This document shows, piece by piece, positions 5,254-64,000 of a DNA stretch of 64,000 nucleotides. The DNA is taken from assembly GCF_001194135.2 (NCBI RefSeq), contig NC_068992.1, forward strand, positions 10,777,833 to 10,841,832, given 5' to 3'. The notes under the pieces are model-generated. The model saw only the letters and a list, made by a program, of their open reading frames with translations. It was not told where the DNA came from and ran no database searches. This stretch comes from Octopus bimaculoides. Its lineage: Eukaryota. Within the stretch, counting starts at the first letter, position 1. Every line of letters starts with the position of its first letter. Position numbers and translations under genes: made by a program.

Positions 5254-5282
5254 TATTAATAATAATAATAATGATAATAATG

Positions 5283-5735
5283 AGGGAGAAAATGTGGCTC
5301 TGGGACTTCCCCGTACATACCAACAAAACTATAAAAACTAATAAACCGGATATTATTATAAAAGATCAGACAAAAAAGATGTGTTTATTAATTGACATGA
5401 GTATTCCCTGCGATCATGATATAGCAGTGAAAGAATTTGACAAGATCGGTAAATATAAAGACTTGCTAATAGAAATTGAAAAAATGTGGCACCTCAAGGC
5501 GACTATCGTACCAGTGATTATAGGATCTCTAGGAATGATTAAAAACAAGGTACTGAAACCTATTTGAAAATGATACCAAGCTTACCATCCNNNNNNNNNN
5601 ATCTCTAGGAATGATTAAAAACAAGGTACTGAAACCTATTTGAAAATGATACCAAGCTTACCATCCCTACAGGAAGTGCAAAAAATTGTGTTAACTGGAA
5701 TGACTCACGTACTGAGAAGAGCATTATCGATGTGA
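5283..5735 (+). mobile_element. 5'-truncated non-LTR retrotransposon 3' end with restriction-like endonuclease domain (R4/Dong/NeSL-like)
   Basis: ORF 5271-5567: KPDIIIKD..LLIDMSIP..KEFDKIGKYKDLLIEIEKMW..IVPVIIGSLG, continuing ..LQEVQKIVLTGMTHVLRRALSM* (stop 5733-35); preceded by (AAT)n. Confidence 0.9.
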
Positions 5736-16894: not shown

Positions 16895-17360
16895 ATCATC
16901 ATCATCATACTTTAAAATCCACTTTTCATGCTGGCATGGGTTGGATGGTTTGACTGAAGACTTGCAAGCCAGGAGGCTGCACCAGGCTCCAATCTCATCT
17001 GACAAGGTTTTTACAGCTGGATGCCTTTCCTAACACCAACCACTCTGAGAGTGTAATGAGTGCTTTTTATGTGAGGGCCAGTCAGGCAGTACTGGCATCA
17101 ACCACATTCGAATGGTGATTTTTATGTGCCACCAGCATGGGTGCCAGTCAGGCGGTAGTTGCATCAGCCACAACAATGATTTCACTTGACTCAACAGGTC
17201 TTCTCAAGCACAGAATATCTCCAAAGGTCTCAGTCGCTTGTTATTGCCAACATTCGAAGGTTGTACTTCACCACCACATCCCAGGTCCTTCTGGGTCTAC
17301 CTCTTCCACAGATTCCTTCCACTGTTAGGGTGTGGCACTTTTCACACAGCTCTATTGCGT
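16895..17360 (-). mobile_element. RTE LINE 3' end (ORF2 terminus, 3' UTR and (GAT)n tail)
   Basis: CHTLTVEGICGRGRPRRTWDVVVKYNLRMLAITSD*, followed by the 3' UTR shared with other copies and a (GAT)n tail. Confidence 0.85.
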
Positions 17361-17436
17361 GTTCCACTTGAGGATTGTAGAGTGTTAATAATTGTTGGAG
17401 AACAATACATTTTCTGGTCCTAGAAAAAGAATAGAC

Positions 17437-17510
17437 CAGTGGTTCCCAACCTGGGGTCCGTGGATCCCTGGTGGTCCACAAAGGTAGTACCAGAGATCCA
17501 TGAACTAAAT
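17437..17510 (+). mobile_element. hAT-Charlie-type terminal fragment
   Basis: CAGTGGTTCCCAACCTGGGGTCCG matches the typical Charlie/MER5-like terminus; no partner end found. Confidence 0.55.
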
Positions 17511-17627
17511 TCAAAATTTCATATATATATATATTCCATACACCATTCATATTACAGTATTACATCTAGCCTAATTGCACCACTCCCAGAACTACTTACC
17601 TCCCTTACATATAATCTTTTTACTCAG

Positions 17628-21364: not shown

Positions 21365-21975
21365 GTTTTATTTCAAGATTTCTTTCCAATAGAGAAAGAA
21401 ATCCGTATGTTGAAGATCTGTCATAGCTTGGATTGCTGGAAGCATTCAAGGTACTTGAAGTCACTGCAGTACAGTGTCCAAGTCTCACATGTCTAGAGAA
21501 GAGTTGGCAGGAGAATGGCATGGAAGACCATGATCTTTGTCTGGATGGTCAGCGCATGACTGAAGACTACACAGCTGAATCTACTGAAGGTGGAGTGGAT
21601 TGCTCTGATCTGGTGCTCCATGTCTTTTTCACAAGTGGGTATCTTTGAAAGGATACTCCCAGAGTATGAGAAGTGTTCAACTTCTTCTGGGGGTTGGCCG
21701 TTGATGCTAATGTTTGTAGGTGGACTGTTCTGGCCTGGTGCAGGTTGGATCAGGGTCTTGGTCTTTAATGTGTTTACCTGCATCCTGAAGCATTTGTAAG
21801 CCATGTTGTAAAGATTGGCTGTCTTTTGTAGGCCATCTGTGATCCGGTTCAAGGTGGCATTGTCATCAGCATACTGCATCTCACAGACTGAAATGGCGGA
21901 AGTCCTTGTCTTTGTGTCGAGACATGAGAGATTGAAGAGTCTGCCATCCAAGAGATAGTGCATGTTGATTGAAGG
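21365..21975 (-). mobile_element. RTE-clade LINE reverse transcriptase fragment (pseudogenised)
   Basis: ORF 21493-21993(-): DGRLFNL..EMQYADD..MQVNTLKTK..EEVEHFSYSGSILS..TIQTKIMVFHAILLPTLL* then TCETWTLY; YADD catalytic motif. Confidence 0.92.
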
Positions 21976-23583
21976 CAAGTCTAGTGCATGCATACATAAT
22001 AATATTTATGTATACATCCATGTATATATTGTGTAACAGAAAGAAGATATATCCCAATATATCCATCCTCATAAACTTGAAAAACCATAAAAGCTATCTG
22101 AATTTTAGAACTGAAATAGTTACTAGATGTATCTACAAAACAAATTTATTTTATTCAATAGGAAGACACCTCCTACACTATTTTCTTTACTTCCGAACAT
22201 ATTTGAAAATCTCACTCTATTTTTACACTAAACTCGTTCAATGCACATTGCACATAACATAGTTCCATACCTTGATCTGCTATCATCACAAGTAAATGCA
22301 TGGCCCTTCTGAGACTGACAAAACTGATGTTGGTTACATGCCCTTCATATTTAAGATAATGAATTGAGATGATGTTAATCTGTACAGAGATCATGCTTCT
22401 TTGCTTTTGAGGAGATAAGTCACACAACACCAATGAAGAATATTTTTGTGATCTTTTATCGCAGAATATGTGTAGCTATCTTGGTTGCATGAAGATGTGA
22501 CTTTGGCACATAGAATTAGGAATTGAAACTAATAAAAGCATAAGAGAGTATTACTTCATCACAGTTGTTGTGTAGTGTATTTGAGTATTCCATTTANNNN
22601 NNNNNNGACGTTAAACGATGATGATGATGATGATGAAGCAGGGTGCAAAAAATAGTTCGAGGAACGATACTTAAAAAGACTCATACCTAATTCAAAGAAA
22701 AATTTATTCTGCTATCATTTTGTGTCATGAAGCTGGAGCTAAGCAACCAACAAACCGTAAAATCTGCTGAGGGCCCGGAGGACATTTACAATTTTATGAC
22801 ATAATATGATTTGTAGATTATTTATAAAATGATTTTCAAATAAATAAGAGCCTTAGGAAGGTTTAACAAGCATTATTGTCAGAAATAGGGAACAAGTTAA
22901 TAAAAAGACAGTCTTTAGCAACATGAAAGGGGAGCAAAACGAATTTATATCAGATTTGTAAAGCAGAGTGCTTTCCTATTGATTTCTCTACGGGGAGAAT
23001 GGATGTAAACATTTTTAGTGAGGTAGTTGTGTTGTTATTACCTTTTTGAGGAATATTAACAGCCCAAGTGAAGTGTAAATTCTCCAGATTGAAATCAAAG
23101 CAAGCTGGGATTTATTTGGTTTTGTGTCAACCATGATTCAACACATGTATAATCAAAATGATCAAAAGCATTCCTGTTTGGATCATCTTATTTTTTATTC
23201 AAATCCATGCATTTCAAACTAGAATATTCAATGACTTGCCCTAACCTTTTTAAGGTTGTAGTGCATGTTTTGAAGGAAATTTTACTGCGATTTCAACCAT
23301 GTATAAAAGTTCGTTCCAATGCCTGAATTGCAAGTAGCTGGAGGATTGGGTTCACAAAGAACCATCTTCTAATGCAGTGAACTCACCAAATATTTATAAC
23401 TAAATTCAACAGGATTTTAAAAATTTAGAATTTGAAAAATTGACTGGATTGAAAAAATTAAGACGGTTCTCAAGGAATAGATCATAAGAATTTATTCCAA
23501 ATACGAAAGAAAATAGATTTTTTTAATATGAAATGGATATCTAAGGTAAGGATAATATATATATATGTATATANNNNNNNNNN

Positions 23584-24818: not shown

Positions 24819-25191
24819 GTGGAAGCGCAATGGCCCAGTGGTTAGGGCAGTGGACTCGCAGTCGTAGGATCGCGGTTTAGATTCCCAGACCAGGCGTTGT
24901 GAGTGTTTATTGAGCGAAAACACCTAAAGCTCCACAAGGCTCCGGCAGGGGATGGTGGCAAACCCTGCTGTACTCTTTCACCACAACTTTCTCTCACTCT
25001 TACTTCCTGTTTCTGTTGTGTCTGTAATTCAAAGGGTCAGCTTTGTCACACTGAATCTCCTCGAGAACTACATTAAGGGTACACGTGTCTGTGGAGTGCT
25101 CAGCTATTTGCACGTTAATTTCACGAACAGGCTGTTCTGTTGATTGGATCAACTGGAACCCTCATCGTTGTAACCGACGGAGTGCCAACCA
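24819..25191 (+). mobile_element. Full-length tRNA(Arg)-like-headed SINE, copy 1 (possibly the octopus OR type)
   Basis: A-box TGGCCCAGTGG, B-box-like GGTTTAGATTCCC; tail GACGGAGTGCCAAC; 10-bp TSD ATATGTATGT (24809-18 / 25192-201). Confidence 0.92.
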
Positions 25192-26111
25192 ATATGTATG
25201 TATCATCACCATCATCATTATATGATTAAAACACACATATAGGACAATCTCCCATGCAATTTCCATCTACCAAATCTACTCATTGGTTGCACAAGAACTA
25301 CAGTAGGAGACACTTGTTGGAGGTGCTATGCAGTAGGATTGAACCCCAAATTTTAGGCTGCAAAGCTAGCATCTTAACCACAGTGCCATACTTTCACCTT
25401 TTGTTAATTTATTTCCTGACAAAAAACACTTTGTCTTAATTCAATTGGATAATTATTTAATTTAGTTTTTATAACTTTATTGAAATTTATATTTCATATC
25501 TACTCTGCATGAATCATTCCACATCTTAATCTTTTACACAATAATACATTACACTTAAGCTATTTAATCAGGAAATTCCTCATAGATATTTCTAAAGCTA
25601 ATTTGTAATAATATTTTTTGAAAAAAAGTATTTTAATTTAATACCTTTATCTAGTTGACTATTTTTCAATATATCAGATTACACGATAATGTTATGTCGC
25701 TATAATAGCATATGTTATGTTGTTGAAATTGACAAAAACATTTTTTTTTTTGCTCATGTTCTAAGTTAATGTAATGTACATACAATAATTGTAAATTCCT
25801 ATTTTGAACACATAACCATTTATTTTAAAATGTTATATTTACGTAAATTACAAATATCTGTAATGAAATAAAATGTAAGAAATATAAATAAAATGGCATC
25901 TGTTCAATTCATGCCTTCTACATAATTATTACTCATGAAAAACTGAATAGTACATAGTACAGCTCCTTTCTAAAAGTACGTATACACTATTTTCTTGTTC
26001 CTTTACAACCCTTCACTCTCTGTCAGGCCGTTGGTTACCTCTAGTTTCAGTTGTGTGAAGTGGATTGAAAAAATCTCCCTCTGGATAGGATTCCAGCCTA
26101 CTGTAGAGAAA

Positions 26112-26395
26112 TATGGAAGCATGTGGCTTAGTGGTTAGGGGTGTTGGACTCAACCAAAGCCCATCACATATATGTAAGTGTCTTCATGCTTGTGCTTGTT
26201 TCCCCAACCACTTAATAAACGGTGTTGGTTTGTTTACATCCCAGTAACATAGCAGTTTCACAAAAGAAACTGATAAAGTAAGTACCACACTTAAAATATT
26301 AGTACTAGGGTCAATCTGTTTTAACCAGACACGTCAAGACAGTGCCCCAGTAGGGTCGCAGTCCATTGACTGAAACAAGTAAAAAGAGGAAAATA
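26112..26395 (+). mobile_element. Internally deleted CORE-like SINE
   Basis: Head GCATGTGGCTTAGTGGTTAGGG joined to AAAGCCC; tail GTGCCCCAG..GACTGAAACAAGTAAAAAG. Confidence 0.7.
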
Positions 26396-32870: not shown

Positions 32871-33062
32871 GTACTTAAGATTAGGGTGACTATAAACAGG
32901 GAGACAATATGTCTAAGAGAAGGTTTATAATAAGATTAGTGAGGAAAGTTATCATTTGGAGATAATTTTAAATTAGATTTCGTATCAGCATATAAATATA
33001 TAGATACATACCCCCCCCCCACAATATATATATATATANNNNNNNNNNNNNNCCCCCCCCCC

Positions 33063-57575: not shown

Positions 57576-60469
57576 NNNNNNNNNNNNNNNNNNNNNNNNN
57601 NNNNNNNNNNNNNNNNNNNNNNNNNNNNNNNNNNNNNNNNNNNNNNNNNNNNNNNNNNNNNNNNNNNNNNNNNNNNNNNNNNNNNNNNNNNNNNNNNNNN
57701 NNNNNNNNNNNNNNNNNNNNNNNNNNNNNNNNNNNNNNNNNNNNNNNNNNNNNNNNNNNNNNNNNNNNNNNNNNNNNNNNNNNNNNNNNAATATCATAAG
57801 ATAAAGATAATAAAATGAATACACGTGTTTCATAACTAATTTTCAAATAGAAAGAAAATTTAAATCGATTAAAATCAATAAAAACTATCGAAAATCAATT
57901 CTATTAAAAAATATAGCTAATCTTCAGGTCAAAATACAATAATAATAATAATAATAATAATAATATTAATAATAATAATAATATTAATAATAAATGAATG
58001 TATATATCAACCAACAATAAATAACAAATGAATTTATATAAAAATATTAAAAATATCAAAATAATAAACATTCCATAATCAACCCTACGTCCACTATAAT
58101 ATATGCTAACAGGTATATTATATACAAAAACCGAATTAAACAAATTTATTATACACACACCCATATATATACATATATACTAAAATACGCACACTCATAA
58201 ATAAACATATATCCATACATATACACATACCCATATGTATATACAAAAAAGCCAACATATACATACATATACACATAAAAATACACAGACTGTAAAACAC
58301 TCACATATATAAATAAATAAAAAAAAGGAATAGTATAAACAAATACACAATCAGTAACGCCCTCAGACATATTATATATATATATATACTCACATGTATA
58401 CACACAAATATATACAGAAACACATATATATATAAATATAAATACATACGTATACATATATACATACACACAAATATAAATATACATACAAACACATATA
58501 GACTAAAACACACACACTCACATGTATACATATACACATACATATGCATATATATAAAGTATCTAAAATATTAATATCAGCAAAGTAGTTTATGGCTATA
58601 TTTAATTTGCCGTTCGTTAAAAGAATTGATTAATGTATCTGAATGTTTATATCAGTAATGTAGTTTATGACTATATTTAATTTGGCGTTCGTGAAACGAA
58701 TTGAATAATGTATCTGAAATGTTTATATCAGTGAAGTAGTTTTTGTCTACATTTAATTTGCCGTTCATGAAAAGAATTGAGTAATGTATCTGAAATGTTT
58801 GTATCAGTGAAGTAGTTTTTGTCTACATTTAATTTGCCATTCGTCAAAAGCATTGAGTAATGTATCTGAAATATATATAACAGTAAAGTAGTTTATGTCT
58901 ACATTTAATTTGCCGTTCCTGAAACAAATTGAGTAATTTATCTGAAATGTTTATATCAGTAAAGTAGTTTATGTCTACATTTAATTAGCCTTTCGTGAAA
59001 GGAACTGAGAGTTGTTTATGTCTACATTTAATTTGCCGTTCGTGAAAGGAATTGGGTAATGTATCTAAATTGTTTATATCAGTAAAGTTGTTTATGTCTA
59101 CATTTAATTTGCCGTTCGTGAAAGGAATTGAGTAATGTATCTGGGATGTTTATATTAGTAAAGTTGTTTATGTCCACATTTAATTAGCCGTTCGTGAAAG
59201 GAATTGAGTAATGTAACTGGAATATTTATAACAGTAAAGTAGTTTATGTATACATTTAATTTGCTGTTCGTGAAAAGAATTAAGTAAAGCATCTAAAATA
59301 TTAACATTAGTAAAGTAGTTTATGTCTACATTTATTTTGCCGTTCGTGAAACGTNNNNNNNNNNNNNNNNNNNNNNNNNNNNNNNNNNNNNNNNNNNNNN
59401 NNNNNNNNNNNNNNNNNNNNNNNNNNNNNNNNAAATGTTTGTATCAGTGAAGTAGTTTTTGTCTACATTTAATTTGCCATTCGTCAAAAGCATTGAGTAA
59501 TGTATCTGAAATATATATAACAGTAAAGTAGTTTATGTCTACATTTAATTTGCCGTTCCTGAAACAAATTGAGTAATTTATCTGAAATGTTTATATCAGT
59601 AAAGTAGTTTATGTCTACATTTAATTAGCCTTTCGTGAAAGGAACTGAGAGTTGTTTATGTCTACATTTAATTTGCCGTTCGTGAAAGGAATTGAGTAAT
59701 GTATCTGGGATGTTTATATTAGTAAAGTTGTTTATGTCCACATTTAATTAGCCGTTCGTGAAAGGAATTGAGTAATGTAACTGGAATATTTATAACAGTA
59801 AAGTAGTTTATGTATACATTTAATTTGCTGTTCGTGAAAAGAATTAAGTAAAGCATCTAAAATATTAACATTAGTAAAGTAGTTTATGTCTACATTTATT
59901 TTGCCGTTCGTGAAACGTATTTAGTAATGTGTCTGAATGTTTATATCAATAAAGTAGTTTATGTATACATTTAATTTGCCGTTTGTGAAAACAGTTGGGT
60001 AATGTATCTAAATTATCTATATTAGTAAAGTTGTTTATGTATACATTTAATTTGCCGTTCGTGAAAGGTATTGAGTAATGTATCTGGATGTTTATAGTAG
60101 TAAAGTTGTTTATGTCTACATTTAATTTGCCGTTCATGAAAGGAATTGAGTAATGTATCTGGGATGTTAATAGTAGTAAAGTTGTTTATGTCTACATTTA
60201 ATTTGCCGTTCGTGAAAGGAATTGAGTAATGTATCTGGGATGTTTATAGTAGTAAAGTTGTTTATGTCAACATTTAATTTGCTGCTCGTGAAAAGAATTA
60301 CGTAAAGTATCTAAAATATTAATATTAGTAAAGTAGTTTGTCTACATTTATTTTGCCGTTCGTGAAAGAAATTTAGTAATGTCTGAATGTTTATATCAGT
60401 AAAGTAATTTATGTATACATCTAATTTGCCGTTTTTGAAAAGAACTGGGTAATGTATCTAAATTATATA

Positions 60470-60518
60470 CCAGCATGGCCGCAGTCAAATGACTGAAACA
60501 AGTAAAAGAGTAAAAGAG
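60470..60518 (+). mobile_element. 5'-truncated SINE 3' tail inserted in a satellite monomer
   Basis: CCAGCATGGCCGCAGTCAAATGACTGAAACAAGTAAAAGAGTAAAAGAG matches the SINE tails at ~26345-26390, ~38565-38612 and ~40625-40670, and interrupts an otherwise normal monomer. Confidence 0.88.
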
Positions 60519-61228
60519 TATTAGTAAAGTTGTTTATGTCTACATTTAATTTGCCGTTCGTGAAAAGAATTGAGTAATGTATCTTAATGGTTCTATTAGT
60601 AAATTTGGTTATGACTACATTTAATTTGCAGTTCATGAAAAGAATTGAGTAATGTATCTGAAATGTTTATATCAGTGAAGTAGTTTACGTATACATTTAA
60701 TTTGCCGTTCGTGAAACGAATTTAGTAATTTGTCTGAATGTTTATATCAGTAAAGTTGTTTATTTATACATTTAATTTGCCGTTTGTGAAAAGAAATGGG
60801 TAATGTATATGGGATGTTTATATTAGTAAAGTTGTTTATGTCTACAATTTATTTGCCGTTCGTGAAAGGAGATGAGTAATGTATCTGAGATGTTTATATT
60901 AGTAAAGTTGTTTATGTCTACATTTAATTTGCCGTTCGTGAACAAAATTGAGTAATGTATCTGGAATATTTATAACAGTAAAGTAGTTTATGTCTACATT
61001 TACTTTACTGATATAAACATTCAGACATTTAATTAGCCGTTCGTGAAAGGAATTGAGAGTTGTTTATGTCTACATTTAATTTGCCGTTCGTGAAAGGAAT
61101 TGGGTAATGTATCTAAATTGTTTATATCAGTAAATTTGTTTATGTCTACATTTAATTTGCCGTTCATGAAAGGAATTGAGTAATGTATCTGGGATGTTTA
61201 TATTAGTAAAGTTGTTTATGTCTACATT

Positions 61229-63022
61229 TACTTTACTGATATAAACATTCAGACACATTACTAAATTAGACATATTACTAAATTTCTTTCACGAACGGCA
61301 AATTAAATGTAGACAAACTACTTTACTAATATTAAAATATTAGATACTTTACTTAATTCTTTTCACGAACAGCAAATTAAATGTATACATAAACTAATTT
61401 ACTGTTATAAATATTCCAGATGCATTACTCATCTGCTTTCACGAACGGCAAATTTAATGTAGACATAAACAACTTTACTACACTATTAACATCCCAGATA
61501 CATTACTCAATTCCTTTCATGAATGGCAAATTAAATGTATACATAAACTACTTTACTGTTACAAATATTCCAGATACATTACTCATCTGCTTTCACGAAC
61601 GGCACATTTAATGTAGACATAAACAACTTTACTACACTACTATTAACATCCCAGATACATTACTCAATTCCTTTCATGAATGGCAAATTAAATGTATACA
61701 AACTACTTTACTGATATAAACTTCCAGATACATTACTCAATTCCTTTCACGAACGGCAATTTAAATGTAGACATAAACAACTTTACTAATATAAACAATT
61801 TAGATACATTACCCAATTCTTGTCGCGAACGGCAAATTAAATGTATACAAACTACTTTACTGATATAAACAGTCAGACACATCATTCAATTCCTTTCACG
61901 AACGGCAAATTAAATGTAGGCATAAACAACTTTACTAATATAAACATCCCAGATACATTACCCAATTCTATTCAGAACCGGAAAATGAATGTATACATAA
62001 ACTACTTTACTGATATAAACATTCAGACACGTTACAAAATTCGTTTCACGAACGGCAAATTAAATGTAGACATAAACTACTTTACTAATGTTAATATTTT
62101 AGATACTTTACTTAATTCTTTTCACGAACAGCAAATTAAATGTAGACATAAACAACGTCACTAATATAAACTTCCCAGATACAGTACTCAGTTCGATACA
62201 TTACTCAATTCCTTTCACGAACGGCAAATTAAATNNNNNNNNNNNNNNNNNNNNNNNNNNNNNNNNNNNNNNNNNNNNNNNNNNNNNNNNNNNNNNNNNN
62301 NNNNNNNNNNNNNNNNNNNNNNNNNNNNNNNNNNATTAAATGTAGACATAAACAACTTTACTAATATAAACATCCCAGATACATCACTCATTTACTTTCA
62401 CGAATGGCAAATTAAATGTAAACATAAACAACTTTACTACTATAAACATCCCAGATACATTACTCAATTCCTTTCAGGGACGGCAAATTAAATGTAGACA
62501 TAAACAACTTTACTGATATAAACGTCCAAGATACATTACCCAATTCTTTTCAGAAACGGCAAATTAAATGAATACATAAACTATTTTACTGATATAAACA
62601 TTCAGACACATTACAAAATTCGTTTCACGAACGGCAAATTAAATGTAGACATAAACTACTTTACTAATGTTAATATTTTAGATACTTTACTTAATTCTTT
62701 TCACGAATAGCGAATTAAATGTATACATAAACTACTTTAATGTTATAAATATTCCAGTTACATTACTCAATTCCTTTCACGAACGGCAAATTAAATGTAG
62801 ACATAAACAACTTTACTAATATAAATACTAATATAAACATCCCAGATACATTACTCAATTCCTTTCACGAACGGCAAATTAAATGCAGACATAAACAACT
62901 TTACTAATGTATATAATTTAGATACGTTACCCAAAAACGGCAAATTAAATTTATACAAACTAATTTACTGATATAAACATCCAGATACATTACTTAATTA
63001 CTTTTAGGAACGGCAAATTAAA
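61229..63022 (-). repeat. Inverted block of the 76-bp satellite
   Basis: Monomers read as the reverse complement (TTCACGAACGGCAAATTAAATGTAGACATAAAC) between 61229 and ~63022, and forward on both sides. Confidence 0.93.
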
Positions 63023-64000
63023 TTGAGTAATGTATCTTAATGGTTCTATTAGTAAATTTGTTTATGACTACATTTAATTTGCCGTTTATGAAAAGAATTG
63101 GGTAATGTATCTGAAATGTTTATATCAGTGAAGTAGTTTACGTATTACATTTAATTTGCCGTTCGTGAAACGAATTTAGTAATTTGTCTGAATGTTTATA
63201 TCAGTAAAGTAGTTTATTTATACATTTAATTTGCCGTTCGTGAAAGGAATTGAGTGTTGTTTATGTCTACATTTAATTTGCCGTTCGTGAAAGTAATCGG
63301 GTAATGTATCTAAATTGTTTATATCAGTAAATTTGTTTATGTCTACATTTAATTTGCTGTTCGTGAAAGCAATTGAGTAATGTATCTGGGATGTTTATAT
63401 TAGTAAAGCTGTTTATGTCTACATTTAATTAGCCGTTCGTGAAAGGAATTGAGTAATGTAACTGGAATATTTATAACAGTAAAATAGTTTATGTATACAT
63501 TTAATTTGCCGTTTCTGAATAGAATTGGGTAATGTATCTGGAATGTTTATATTACTAAAGTTGTTTATGTCTACATTTAATTTGCCGTTCGTGAAAGGAA
63601 TTGAGTAATGTATCTGGGATGTTTATAGTAGTAAAGTTGTTTATGTCTACATTTAATTTGCCGTTCGTGAAAGGAGATGAGTAATGTATCTGGGATATTT
63701 ATATTAGTAAAGTTGTTTATGTCTACATTTAATTTGCCGTTCGTGAAAGGAATTGAGTACAGTATCTGGGATGTTTATAGTAGTAAAGTTGTTTATGTCT
63801 ACATTTAATTTGCCGTTCGTGAAATAAATTGAGTAATGTATCTGGAATATTTATAACAGTAAAGTAGTTTATGTATACATTTAATTTGCCGTTCGTGAAA
63901 GAAATTGAGTAATGTATCTGGAATATTTATAACAGTAAAGTAGTTTATGTATACATTTAATTTGCTGTTCGTGAAAAGAATCAAGTAAAGTATCTAAAAT

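What the first reader, a model, noticed from the sequence alone, without database searches (positions are those of the whole stretch)
61229..63022. A ~1.8-kb orientation flip inside the 76-bp satellite
The array switches from forward to reverse at 61228/61229 (GTCTACATT|TACTTTACTG) with no spacer, and back at ~63021 through the shared AAATT. The inverted block carries the same diagnostic variant monomers as the forward part (e.g. the GCTGTTCGTG..TAAAGTATCTAAAATATTAA variant at ~61335-61372, ~62085-62132 and ~62665-62710), so the inversion post-dates monomer diversification. Spacer-less polarity switches create long palindromes that could form cruciforms, and are informative about satellite turnover.
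Basis: seen in the sequence. Interest (0 to 1): 0.7.

Follow-up and report, generated by a model that had tools for sequence, protein, structure and literature searches.

The report
Small inversion inside an octopod satellite
About 1.7 kb of a 76-bp tandem repeat in an octopus-like genome lies backwards relative to its neighbours, and its two ends fit together like a real inversion; this kind of event is already well known, and no sequencing reads could be consulted to confirm it.

Summary
A 76-bp satellite starts at 58555 and runs off the window end. It reads forward to 61228, reverse from 61229 to about 63020, then forward again.

Both switches lie inside contigs, not at N gaps. Each keeps its type however its contig is oriented, so a scaffolding misjoin cannot explain them.

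The 100-N gap (62235-62334) has reverse monomers on both sides and breaks the 76-bp phase. Its flanks share 7 nt. With the gap removed, the block is colinear with a forward paralogue at 94.3%, so probably nothing is missing and the block is about 1,685 nt.

Turning 61229-63020 back in silico restores exact monomer phase at the left join. At the right join it restores the repeat order of a forward paralogue (94.7%), apart from one 161-nt loss. The two junctions therefore look like reciprocal ends of one in-place inversion that is younger than the higher-order repeat.

Not supported: "long palindromes". Arms are 84-95% complementary over about 20-43 nt and 73-86% beyond, with 15-21 nt loops.

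Caveats:
- This is a gap-rich, short-read-like assembly with redundant contig ends.
- J1 shares 42 nt with a 29-nt inverted patch 228 bp upstream.

Probability real is about 0.6. Such inversions are well known, so interest is low.

The parts
58555..61228 (+). Forward part of the 76-bp satellite array (F1). Its left edge abuts AC/AT-rich microsatellite. It contains recurring monomer types and a 47-nt truncated monomer.
   Evidence: TRF, monomer tiling, identity matrix
59355..59432 (.). Assembly gap 1 (78 N) with redundant flanks: 58793-59054 = 59433-59694 and 59086-59354 = 59650-59918, both at 100%. The two copies differ by one 76-bp monomer.
60460..60527 (+). Non-satellite insert. It is a fragment of a dispersed repeat (SINE-like tail, my label) with related copies at 26358, 36185(-) and 43475(-). 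It lies within the 161 nt missing from the restored right join.
61001..61027 (-). 27-nt inverted core of a 29-nt insertion in a 47-nt truncated monomer (60982-61057). 60986-61027 is identical to 61214-61255 at J1.
61214..61228 (+). J1 (head-to-head switch): the last 15 forward bases, GTTTATGTCTACATT, form the asymmetric loop. The breakpoint is 61228|61229 with 2-nt microhomology (TA).
61229..62234 (-). Inverted block, part 1 (3' end of the contig 59433-62234). Reading rightwards the monomer types are W'' V'' D'' C'' D'' C'' C B C X' W V C*.
62235..62334 (.). Assembly gap 2 (100 N placeholder). Both flanks are reverse, share 7 nt (ATTAAAT) and are out of 76-bp phase as written.
62335..63020 (-). 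Inverted block, part 2 (5' end of the next contig). It is an inverted paralogue of forward 59650-60202 at 94.4%.
63019..63023 (.). J2 (tail-to-tail switch): a 3-5 nt microhomology ((T)A-AAT) shared by the reverse end ...GGCAAATTAAAT and the forward start AATTGAG. No exact repeat longer than 19 nt spans it.
63021..64000 (+). Forward array resumes (F2) and runs off the window end. 63021-63265 is 94.7% identical to 60568-60811.

Best explanation
This is a genuine in-place inversion of about 22 monomers (about 1.7 kb) near the left, divergent edge of a 76-bp satellite array with higher-order repeat structure, in an octopod genome.

Two breaks occurred. One was at consensus position 19/20 of a D-type monomer. 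The other was just after a W-type monomer. They were rejoined with the intervening segment reversed.

The left join is clean: exact monomer phase, with 2-5 nt of microhomology. The right join lost sequence: 36 nt in monomer phase, or 161 nt relative to the forward paralogue.

This pattern fits end joining (NHEJ/MMEJ) of two double-strand breaks. It fits equally well a pair of replication template switches (FoSTeS/MMBIR type).

The event is younger than the higher-order repeat. It is not recent: the block has its own variants and internal duplications.

Shown: the layout, the phase, the paralogy and the microhomologies. Inferred: the repair mechanism, and that the assembly reflects the animal's DNA. 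No function is implied. The likely consequences are local only: two imperfect hairpin-capable sites, and a block that cannot exchange with its flanks by unequal crossing-over.
For: - Orientation runs are unambiguous.
- Both junctions sit inside contigs. One is head-to-head and the other tail-to-tail, whichever way the contigs are oriented.
- Un-inverting 61229-63020 gives GTCTACATT|TAATTTGCC at the left, which is exact monomer phase. The alignment to 63256-63465 is ungapped across the join.
- At the right, RC(61229-61400) + 63021-63270 aligns to forward 60256-60811 at 94.7%, with a single 161-nt gap exactly at the join.
- The best forward match of the monomer next to J1 is 60332-60402, which shares the private GTTTGTCTAC deletion and AGAAATTTAG (my reading). 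The best match of the first monomer after J2 is 60528 (40-nt exact match). The two are near-neighbours in the forward array.
- My rough chance estimates are about 8% for the phase match and about 6% for the adjacency.
- Reverse monomers carry the same V and W diagnostic states as forward ones.
- RC(62007-62900) is colinear with 59650-60402 at 94.3%. Forward-to-forward paralogues show the same level, 92-95%.
- No exact repeat longer than 19 nt spans J2, and 62886-63020 has no exact repeat of 31 nt or more elsewhere in 58501-64000. A k-mer assembler could therefore only have taken J2 from reads.
- Satellite-internal inversions are common in complete assemblies (10.1101/2021.07.12.452052).
Against: - No reads or independent assembly could be consulted.
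- The assembly is gap-rich. 16 N runs lie in the 64 kb, many next to (TA)n.
- It leaves redundant contig ends, at 59355-59432 and at 5591-5600.
- The contigs pass through exact repeats of 62-97 nt, so order over more than a few hundred bp is not guaranteed.
- J1 shares 42 identical nt with the left edge of a 29-nt inverted patch 228 bp upstream. That could let a small-k graph switch strand.
- The right join is not clean.
Confidence: 0.6

Rival explanations
1. Contig-level assembly artefact. The satellite is a tangle for a short-read assembler. At J1 the graph walk entered the real 29-nt inverted patch and left it on the reverse strand of an ordinary W-type monomer. J2 would be a chimeric or mis-closed join. 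The genome would then have no 1.7-kb inverted block here.
For: - The 42-nt identity between the patch (60986-61027) and J1 (61214-61255).
- The pieces shared with other places overlap by 24 nt (61232-61255). A graph with k of about 25-28 or less would therefore need no new k-mer for J1.
- The 170 nt before J1 are 98.8% identical to 59006-59174, including an 81-nt exact repeat.
- There are redundant contig ends at two gaps.
- A placeholder gap sits in the middle of the block.
Against: - It needs an unusually small k. Any k of 29 or more requires reads containing both 61228 and 61256.
- J2 has only 3-5 nt of microhomology, and nothing longer than 19 nt spans it. It cannot arise from shared k-mers.
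- A random mis-join does not predict that un-inverting restores exact phase at one end and the paralogue's monomer order at the other.
- This assembly writes Ns where joins are uncertain, even for overlapping ends. Neither junction has Ns.
Confidence: 0.3
2. The structure is real but is not an in-place inversion. Either it is a fold-back inverted duplication (DUP-INV-DUP type, two template switches that copy neighbouring sequence), or a satellite segment from elsewhere was inserted backwards.
For: - Both junctions have fold-back geometry, with short loops of 15-21 nt and microhomology.
- The forward sequence after J2 (63021-63427) resembles the forward sequence before J1 (60568-61230) at 93-95%, as a DUP-INV-DUP structure would.
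Against: - The arms next to J1 are only 86% alike over about 330 nt. That is ordinary monomer-level similarity, not a copy.
- The 93-95% between the forward blocks equals the level between any two higher-order repeat copies in the array.
- The reciprocal fit of the two junctions is what an in-place inversion predicts. An insertion from elsewhere does not predict it.
Confidence: 0.1

Closest known systems
Inversions (strand switches) inside human satellite arrays: divergent alpha satellite, HSat3, beta satellite (T2T-CHM13)
   Same: The same repeat family lies on both sides in opposite orientation. The site is in a divergent, array-edge region that also carries a transposable-element fragment. 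[quoted passage not shown]
   Different: This is a different organism (octopod) and an unrelated 76-bp monomer. The scale is far smaller (about 1.7 kb against kb to Mb). It rests on a gap-rich assembly without long-read support.
Microhomology-mediated template-switch rearrangements (FoSTeS/MMBIR; short templated inverted insertions)
   Same: There is 2-5 nt of microhomology at both junctions. A 29-nt templated inverted insertion lies nearby with the same left junction. It forms a 22-nt, 91% complementary fold-back with the sequence 15 nt upstream. The comparison with these mechanisms rests on my own knowledge of them, not on a test here.
   Different: The mechanism cannot be told apart from two-break end joining using sequence alone. 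The patch is not 100% complementary to its neighbour, so it is either not fresh or was templated elsewhere.
Long palindromes or cruciform-forming inverted repeats
   Same: Two inverted arms meet with no foreign spacer. The predicted DNA hairpins are -23.5 and -21 kcal/mol, z about -6.3 and -6.6.
   Different: The arms are imperfect and short: 19 nt at 95% and 43 nt at 84%, with 17- and 21-nt loops. Identity is 73-86% beyond the first monomer. This is not a long near-perfect palindrome.

Membership tests
Intra-array satellite inversion (polarity switch pair) | The same monomer family lies on both sides of each junction, in opposite orientation | tested here: met
   Tiling scores are 87-140 for reverse monomers 61323-62900 and comparable for the forward ones. 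Diagnostic states are shared.
Intra-array satellite inversion (polarity switch pair) | One head-to-head and one tail-to-tail junction bound the block | tested here: met
   J1 is at 61228|61229 and J2 at 63019-63023.
Intra-array satellite inversion (polarity switch pair) | Reversing the block restores monomer phase and higher-order repeat order at both joins | tested here: met
   Left join: exact phase. Right join: order of paralogue 60256-60811 restored at 94.7%, with one 161-nt loss at the join.
Intra-array satellite inversion (polarity switch pair) | Junctions are present in the organism's DNA (spanning reads or an independent assembly) | not testable with these tools
There were 0 hits in the metagenome, viral and prokaryote contig scans.
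Fold-back inverted duplication (palindromic duplication) | The arms on either side of the junction are reverse-complement copies of each other, well above background monomer similarity | tested here: not met
   60830-61213 against RC(61229-61612) is 86.2%, with 9 internal alignment breaks. The background between monomers is 81-86%.
Cruciform-prone long palindrome | A near-perfect inverted repeat of many tens of bp with a very short spacer | tested here: not met
   The best stems are 19 nt at 95% with a 17-nt spacer (J1) and 43 nt at 84% with a 21-nt spacer (J2).
Scaffolding misjoin (contig placed backwards) | Orientation changes coincide with N gaps and vanish if a contig is flipped | tested here: not met
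   The gaps are at 59355-59432 and 62235-62334, while the junctions are at 61228 and 63020. Each contig carries its own switch, and the switch type does not change on reverse-complementing.
De Bruijn graph strand-switch artefact | An exact inverted match of at least k-1 nt bridges the junction | tested here: inconclusive
   J1: a bridge of 24-28 nt is available through the inverted patch. That is enough only for k of about 25-28 or less, and the assembler's k is unknown. J2: at most 19 nt spans it.

The most novel reading that the evidence does not exclude
The 29-nt inverted patch at 61001-61027 would be a templated insertion copied from J1 into a neighbouring monomer, by gene conversion that ran across the polarity switch and then fell back at ACA microhomology. 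The reverse is also possible: the patch came first and seeded the kb-scale inversion. Either way, this locus would preserve an intermediate linking micro-scale template switches to kb-scale inversions. It would show how homogenisation behaves at an orientation boundary in a satellite.
Probability: 0.15. Interest if true: 0.4.

Novelty: new member of a known kind. Interest (0 to 1): 0.2.

Why it matters
If real, this is a small example of an inversion inside a satellite array whose two breakpoints can both be read at base resolution. One join is clean and in phase. The other has a deletion at the site where the paralogous repeat copy carries a transposable-element fragment.

That says something about how array edges decay, and about the age order: higher-order repeat first, inversion later. 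It does not open a new question. Complete human assemblies already show hundreds of such breakpoints.

The practical value is as a caution. In a gap-rich assembly the layout is a hypothesis. The 100-N gap probably hides nothing, and about 640 bp (Ns included) around the first gap is probably redundant.

Tried and rejected
- **Independent copies.** An exact scan for the J1 junction in metagenome contigs found nothing. Scans for the satellite core in viral, metagenome and prokaryote genome contigs also gave 0 hits.
- **Literature.** No paper prints the satellite core. No octopus satellite paper turned up.
- **Species.** A reverse-transcriptase-like ORF gives only 70% identity to an Octopus vulgaris protein, and the ORF itself is not on record. 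I say only 'octopod'.
- **The lone reverse anchor hit at 25119.** It lies in an unrelated dispersed repeat, not in a satellite copy.
- **RNA reading.** Only far sub-threshold miRNA-like hits appeared, including one over the J2 hairpin (E = 0.16 against a gathering score of 89 bits). Nothing reached gathering score, and there are no tRNAs. Rejected.
- **Inversion by recombination between the patch and a downstream W monomer.** This predicts J2 as ...GGCTAATTAAA|TGTCTGAATG. The observed J2 has GGCAAATTAAAT|TGAGTAATG. Rejected, from my reading.
- **Large palindrome centred on J1.** One V-V pair lies roughly equidistant from J1, but the monomer order between them is not mirrored, and the adjacent arms are 86% alike. 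Rejected.
- **Contig ends at gap 2 as redundant copies (as at gap 1).** 62006-62128 and 62585-62707 are 99.2% alike, but the flanks diverge. They are repeat paralogues, not the same sequence.

Full report
**What is there**

A 76-bp tandem repeat begins at 58555, directly after AC/AT-rich microsatellite, and runs to the end of the window. Tiling the region with the consensus on both strands gives three runs:
- forward monomers 58584-61234
- reverse monomers 61233-63023
- forward monomers 63021-63995

A 13-nt anchor gives the same picture: 34 forward hits, then 20 reverse hits, then 12 forward hits. One further reverse hit at 25119 lies in an unrelated dispersed repeat.

The host is an octopod. 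A reverse-transcriptase-like ORF at 21493-21993(-) has its best hit, at 70% identity, to an Octopus vulgaris protein. The exact species was not established.

**The gaps, tested first**

The window has 16 runs of N, many next to (TA)n. Together with the variable gap lengths, this points to a scaffolded short-read assembly. That is my inference.

Two gaps lie in the array. The contigs here are therefore 57790-59354, 59433-62234 and 62335 onwards.

Gap 62235-62334 (100 N):
- It has reverse monomers on both sides.
- The left flank ends ...GGCAAATTAAAT (consensus position 17) and the right flank starts ATTAAATGTAGAC (position 23). The flanks share 7 nt.
- The 100 N break the 76-bp phase (107 = 76 + 31), so the length is a placeholder.
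- With the Ns removed and the 7 nt merged, RC(62007-62900) is colinear with forward 59650-60402 at 94.3% over 750 columns. The former gap falls inside an ungapped block.
- The simplest reading is that nothing is missing and the block is about 1,685 nt (about 22 monomers). A whole number of repeat units cannot be excluded.

Gap 59355-59432 is different. Its flanks are 100% identical duplicates (58793-59054 = 59433-59694; 59086-59354 = 59650-59918) apart from one monomer. This is an unmerged contig overlap. The 10-N gap at 5591-5600 shows the same thing. Copy number in this array is therefore not reliable.

**The junctions**

J1 reads ...AGTTGTTTATGTCTACATT|TACTTTACTGATATAAACATTCAGACACATTAC...
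- The forward strand stops at consensus position 19 (ambiguous to 21).
- The reverse strand starts at position 4 of the following monomer. The arms are therefore offset by a 15-17 nt loop.
- The microhomology is 2 nt.

J2 reads ...AGGAACGGCAAATTAAAT/TGAGTAATG...
- The reverse strand ends at position 17-20 and the forward strand starts at position 41.
- The loop is 21 nt and the microhomology 3-5 nt.

Both junctions are inside contigs. A forward-then-reverse contig stays forward-then-reverse when reverse-complemented, and the same holds for reverse-then-forward. No re-orientation of contigs can therefore remove the switches.

**Not a long palindrome**

- The arms are 85-90% alike over 20-40 nt and 73-80% over 150 nt or more.
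- 60830-61213 against RC(61229-61612) is 86.2%, with nine internal alignment breaks. That is ordinary inter-monomer similarity; block means are 81-86%.
- The best stems are 19 nt at 95% (J1) and 43 nt at 84% (J2).
- The predicted DNA hairpins are -23.5 and -21 kcal/mol, with z about -6.3 and -6.6.
- Local hairpins are possible. The 'long palindrome / cruciform' idea is not supported.

**The block is a piece of the same higher-order repeat**

V has 29T, 46A, 52A and 67A in 5 of 5 members, against 0-3 of 52 other monomers.
- The order of types is mirrored as expected: X W V D C reading rightwards in the block, against C D V W X in the forward array.
- Inverted paralogy reaches 94.3-94.4% over 550-750 columns. 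Forward-to-forward paralogues show the same level, 92-95%.
- The flip is therefore younger than the higher-order repeat.
- The block also has its own features: two 17-nt duplications (61251-61284 and 62178-62211), a 154-bp dimer repeat, and slightly lower internal identity.

**The key test: un-inverting in silico**

Left join. Joining 61228 to RC(63020...) gives GTCTACATT|TAATTTGCC. This is exact monomer phase, and the join sits inside an ungapped alignment block to 63256-63465.

Right join. Joining RC(61229-61400) to 63021-63270 gives a sequence that aligns to forward 60256-60811 at 94.7%. It has one 161-nt gap (60407-60567) exactly at the join. The missing stretch in the paralogue holds a partial monomer, a 50-nt fragment of a dispersed repeat and 40 nt of the next monomer.

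Paralogue matches:
- The monomer next to J1 shares private features with 60332-60402: the GTTTGTCTAC deletion and AGAAATTTAG (my reading).
- The first monomer after J2 shares a 40-nt exact match with 60568-60607.
- These two forward monomers are near-neighbours.

My rough estimates of chance agreement are about 8% for the phase and about 6% for the adjacency. J1 and J2 therefore behave as reciprocal ends of one event. An in-place inversion predicts this. A random mis-join does not.

**Why I still hold back**

- 60986-61027 is identical to 61214-61255. The first copy is the left edge of a 29-nt inverted insertion inside a 47-nt truncated monomer.
- Within the window, J1 can be composed from pieces seen elsewhere that overlap by 24 nt. 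A graph assembler with k of about 25-28 or less could then have switched strand there without any true junction read. With k of 29 or more it could not. The assembler's k is unknown.
- The contigs also cross exact repeats of 62-97 nt.
- J2 is safer. Nothing longer than 19 nt spans it, and the 135 nt to its left have no exact repeat of 31 nt or more elsewhere in 58501-64000.
- If J2 is real and the scaffold order is right, a forward-to-reverse junction must exist somewhere to its left anyway.
No independent contigs were found.

**Mechanism**

My best reading, at about 0.6, is two breaks rejoined with the segment reversed. One join is clean and one has a deletion, and both have microhomology. 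This fits end joining or two replication template switches equally well.

The nearby 29-nt patch shows that short templated inverted insertions do occur in this repeat, if the contig is right. The patch forms a 22-nt, 91% fold-back with sequence 15 nt upstream.

Rival readings:
- Contig-level artefact: about 0.3.
- Fold-back duplication or foreign inverted insertion: about 0.1. The 86% arms and the reciprocal fit argue against it.

**Comparison with what is known**

Inversions inside satellite arrays are well documented. In the complete human genome, divergent alpha satellite contains many. Over 200 breakpoints are counted across the large HSat3 array on chr9 and beta satellite arrays. Array flanks 'accumulate mutations, inversions, TE insertions' (10.1101/2021.07.12.452052).

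The present case matches that picture: an array edge, about 85% monomer identity, a transposable-element fragment and an inversion. It is a new example of a known kind, in an animal group where I found no satellite literature.

**Verdict**

An inversion younger than monomer diversification: yes, in the assembly. Long palindromes: no.
- Reality in the genome is untested.
- Interest is low, about 0.2.

Noticed in passing
window 58793-59354 and 59433-59918 (flanks of the 78-N gap 59355-59432): The two flanks are 100% identical duplicates, apart from one 76-bp monomer (59010-59085) that is absent from the second copy. This is probably an unmerged contig overlap or a heterozygous monomer indel. About 640 bp of the written sequence (the 78 Ns included) would then be redundant.
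   Followed up: yes
window 60460-60527: The satellite is interrupted by about 50-68 nt of non-satellite DNA (CCAGCATGGCCGCAGTCAAATGACTGAAACAAGTAAAAGAG...). Its core recurs with 2-3 mismatches at 26358(+), 36185(-) and 43475(-). It is a fragment of a dispersed, SINE-like repeat. It lies within the 161 nt that the restored right join of the inversion lacks.
   Followed up: partly
window 60982-61057 (core 61001-61027): A 47-nt truncated monomer type recurs at 58963, 59603 and 63208. The copy here carries a 29-nt insertion that is the reverse complement of a W-type monomer segment. This brings it back to 76 nt and gives it the same 42-nt left junction as J1.
   Followed up: yes
window 61251-61284 and 62178-62211: Two reverse monomers about 930 bp apart each carry a 17-nt tandem duplication at the same monomer position (AGACACATTACTAAATT x2 and GATACAGTACTCAATTC x2). 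TRF reports no such duplication in the forward blocks.
   Followed up: no
window 5591-5600 and 33039-33052: Short N gaps (10 and 14 N) also have overlapping or near-duplicate flanks. For the first, the right head is found at 5525 and the left tail at 5637. The assembly therefore often leaves negative gaps unmerged. Most long gaps sit in (TA)n tracts.
   Followed up: partly
window 21493-21993 (-), also 5271-5567 (+) and 17230-17550 (-): These look like retrotransposon remnants. A 166-aa ORF containing a YADD motif has hits at 70% to an Octopus vulgaris hypothetical protein and at 54% to a protein with a PF00078 domain. The other two ORFs look like non-LTR retrotransposon C-terminal fragments; that is my reading and was not searched.
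   Followed up: partly
window 24850-25250 (-): A dispersed-repeat copy containing ...CAGCCTGTTCGTGAAATTAACG... matches the satellite anchor with 2 mismatches by chance. It is not a satellite monomer. No tRNA-like structure was detected by ARAGORN.
   Followed up: partly
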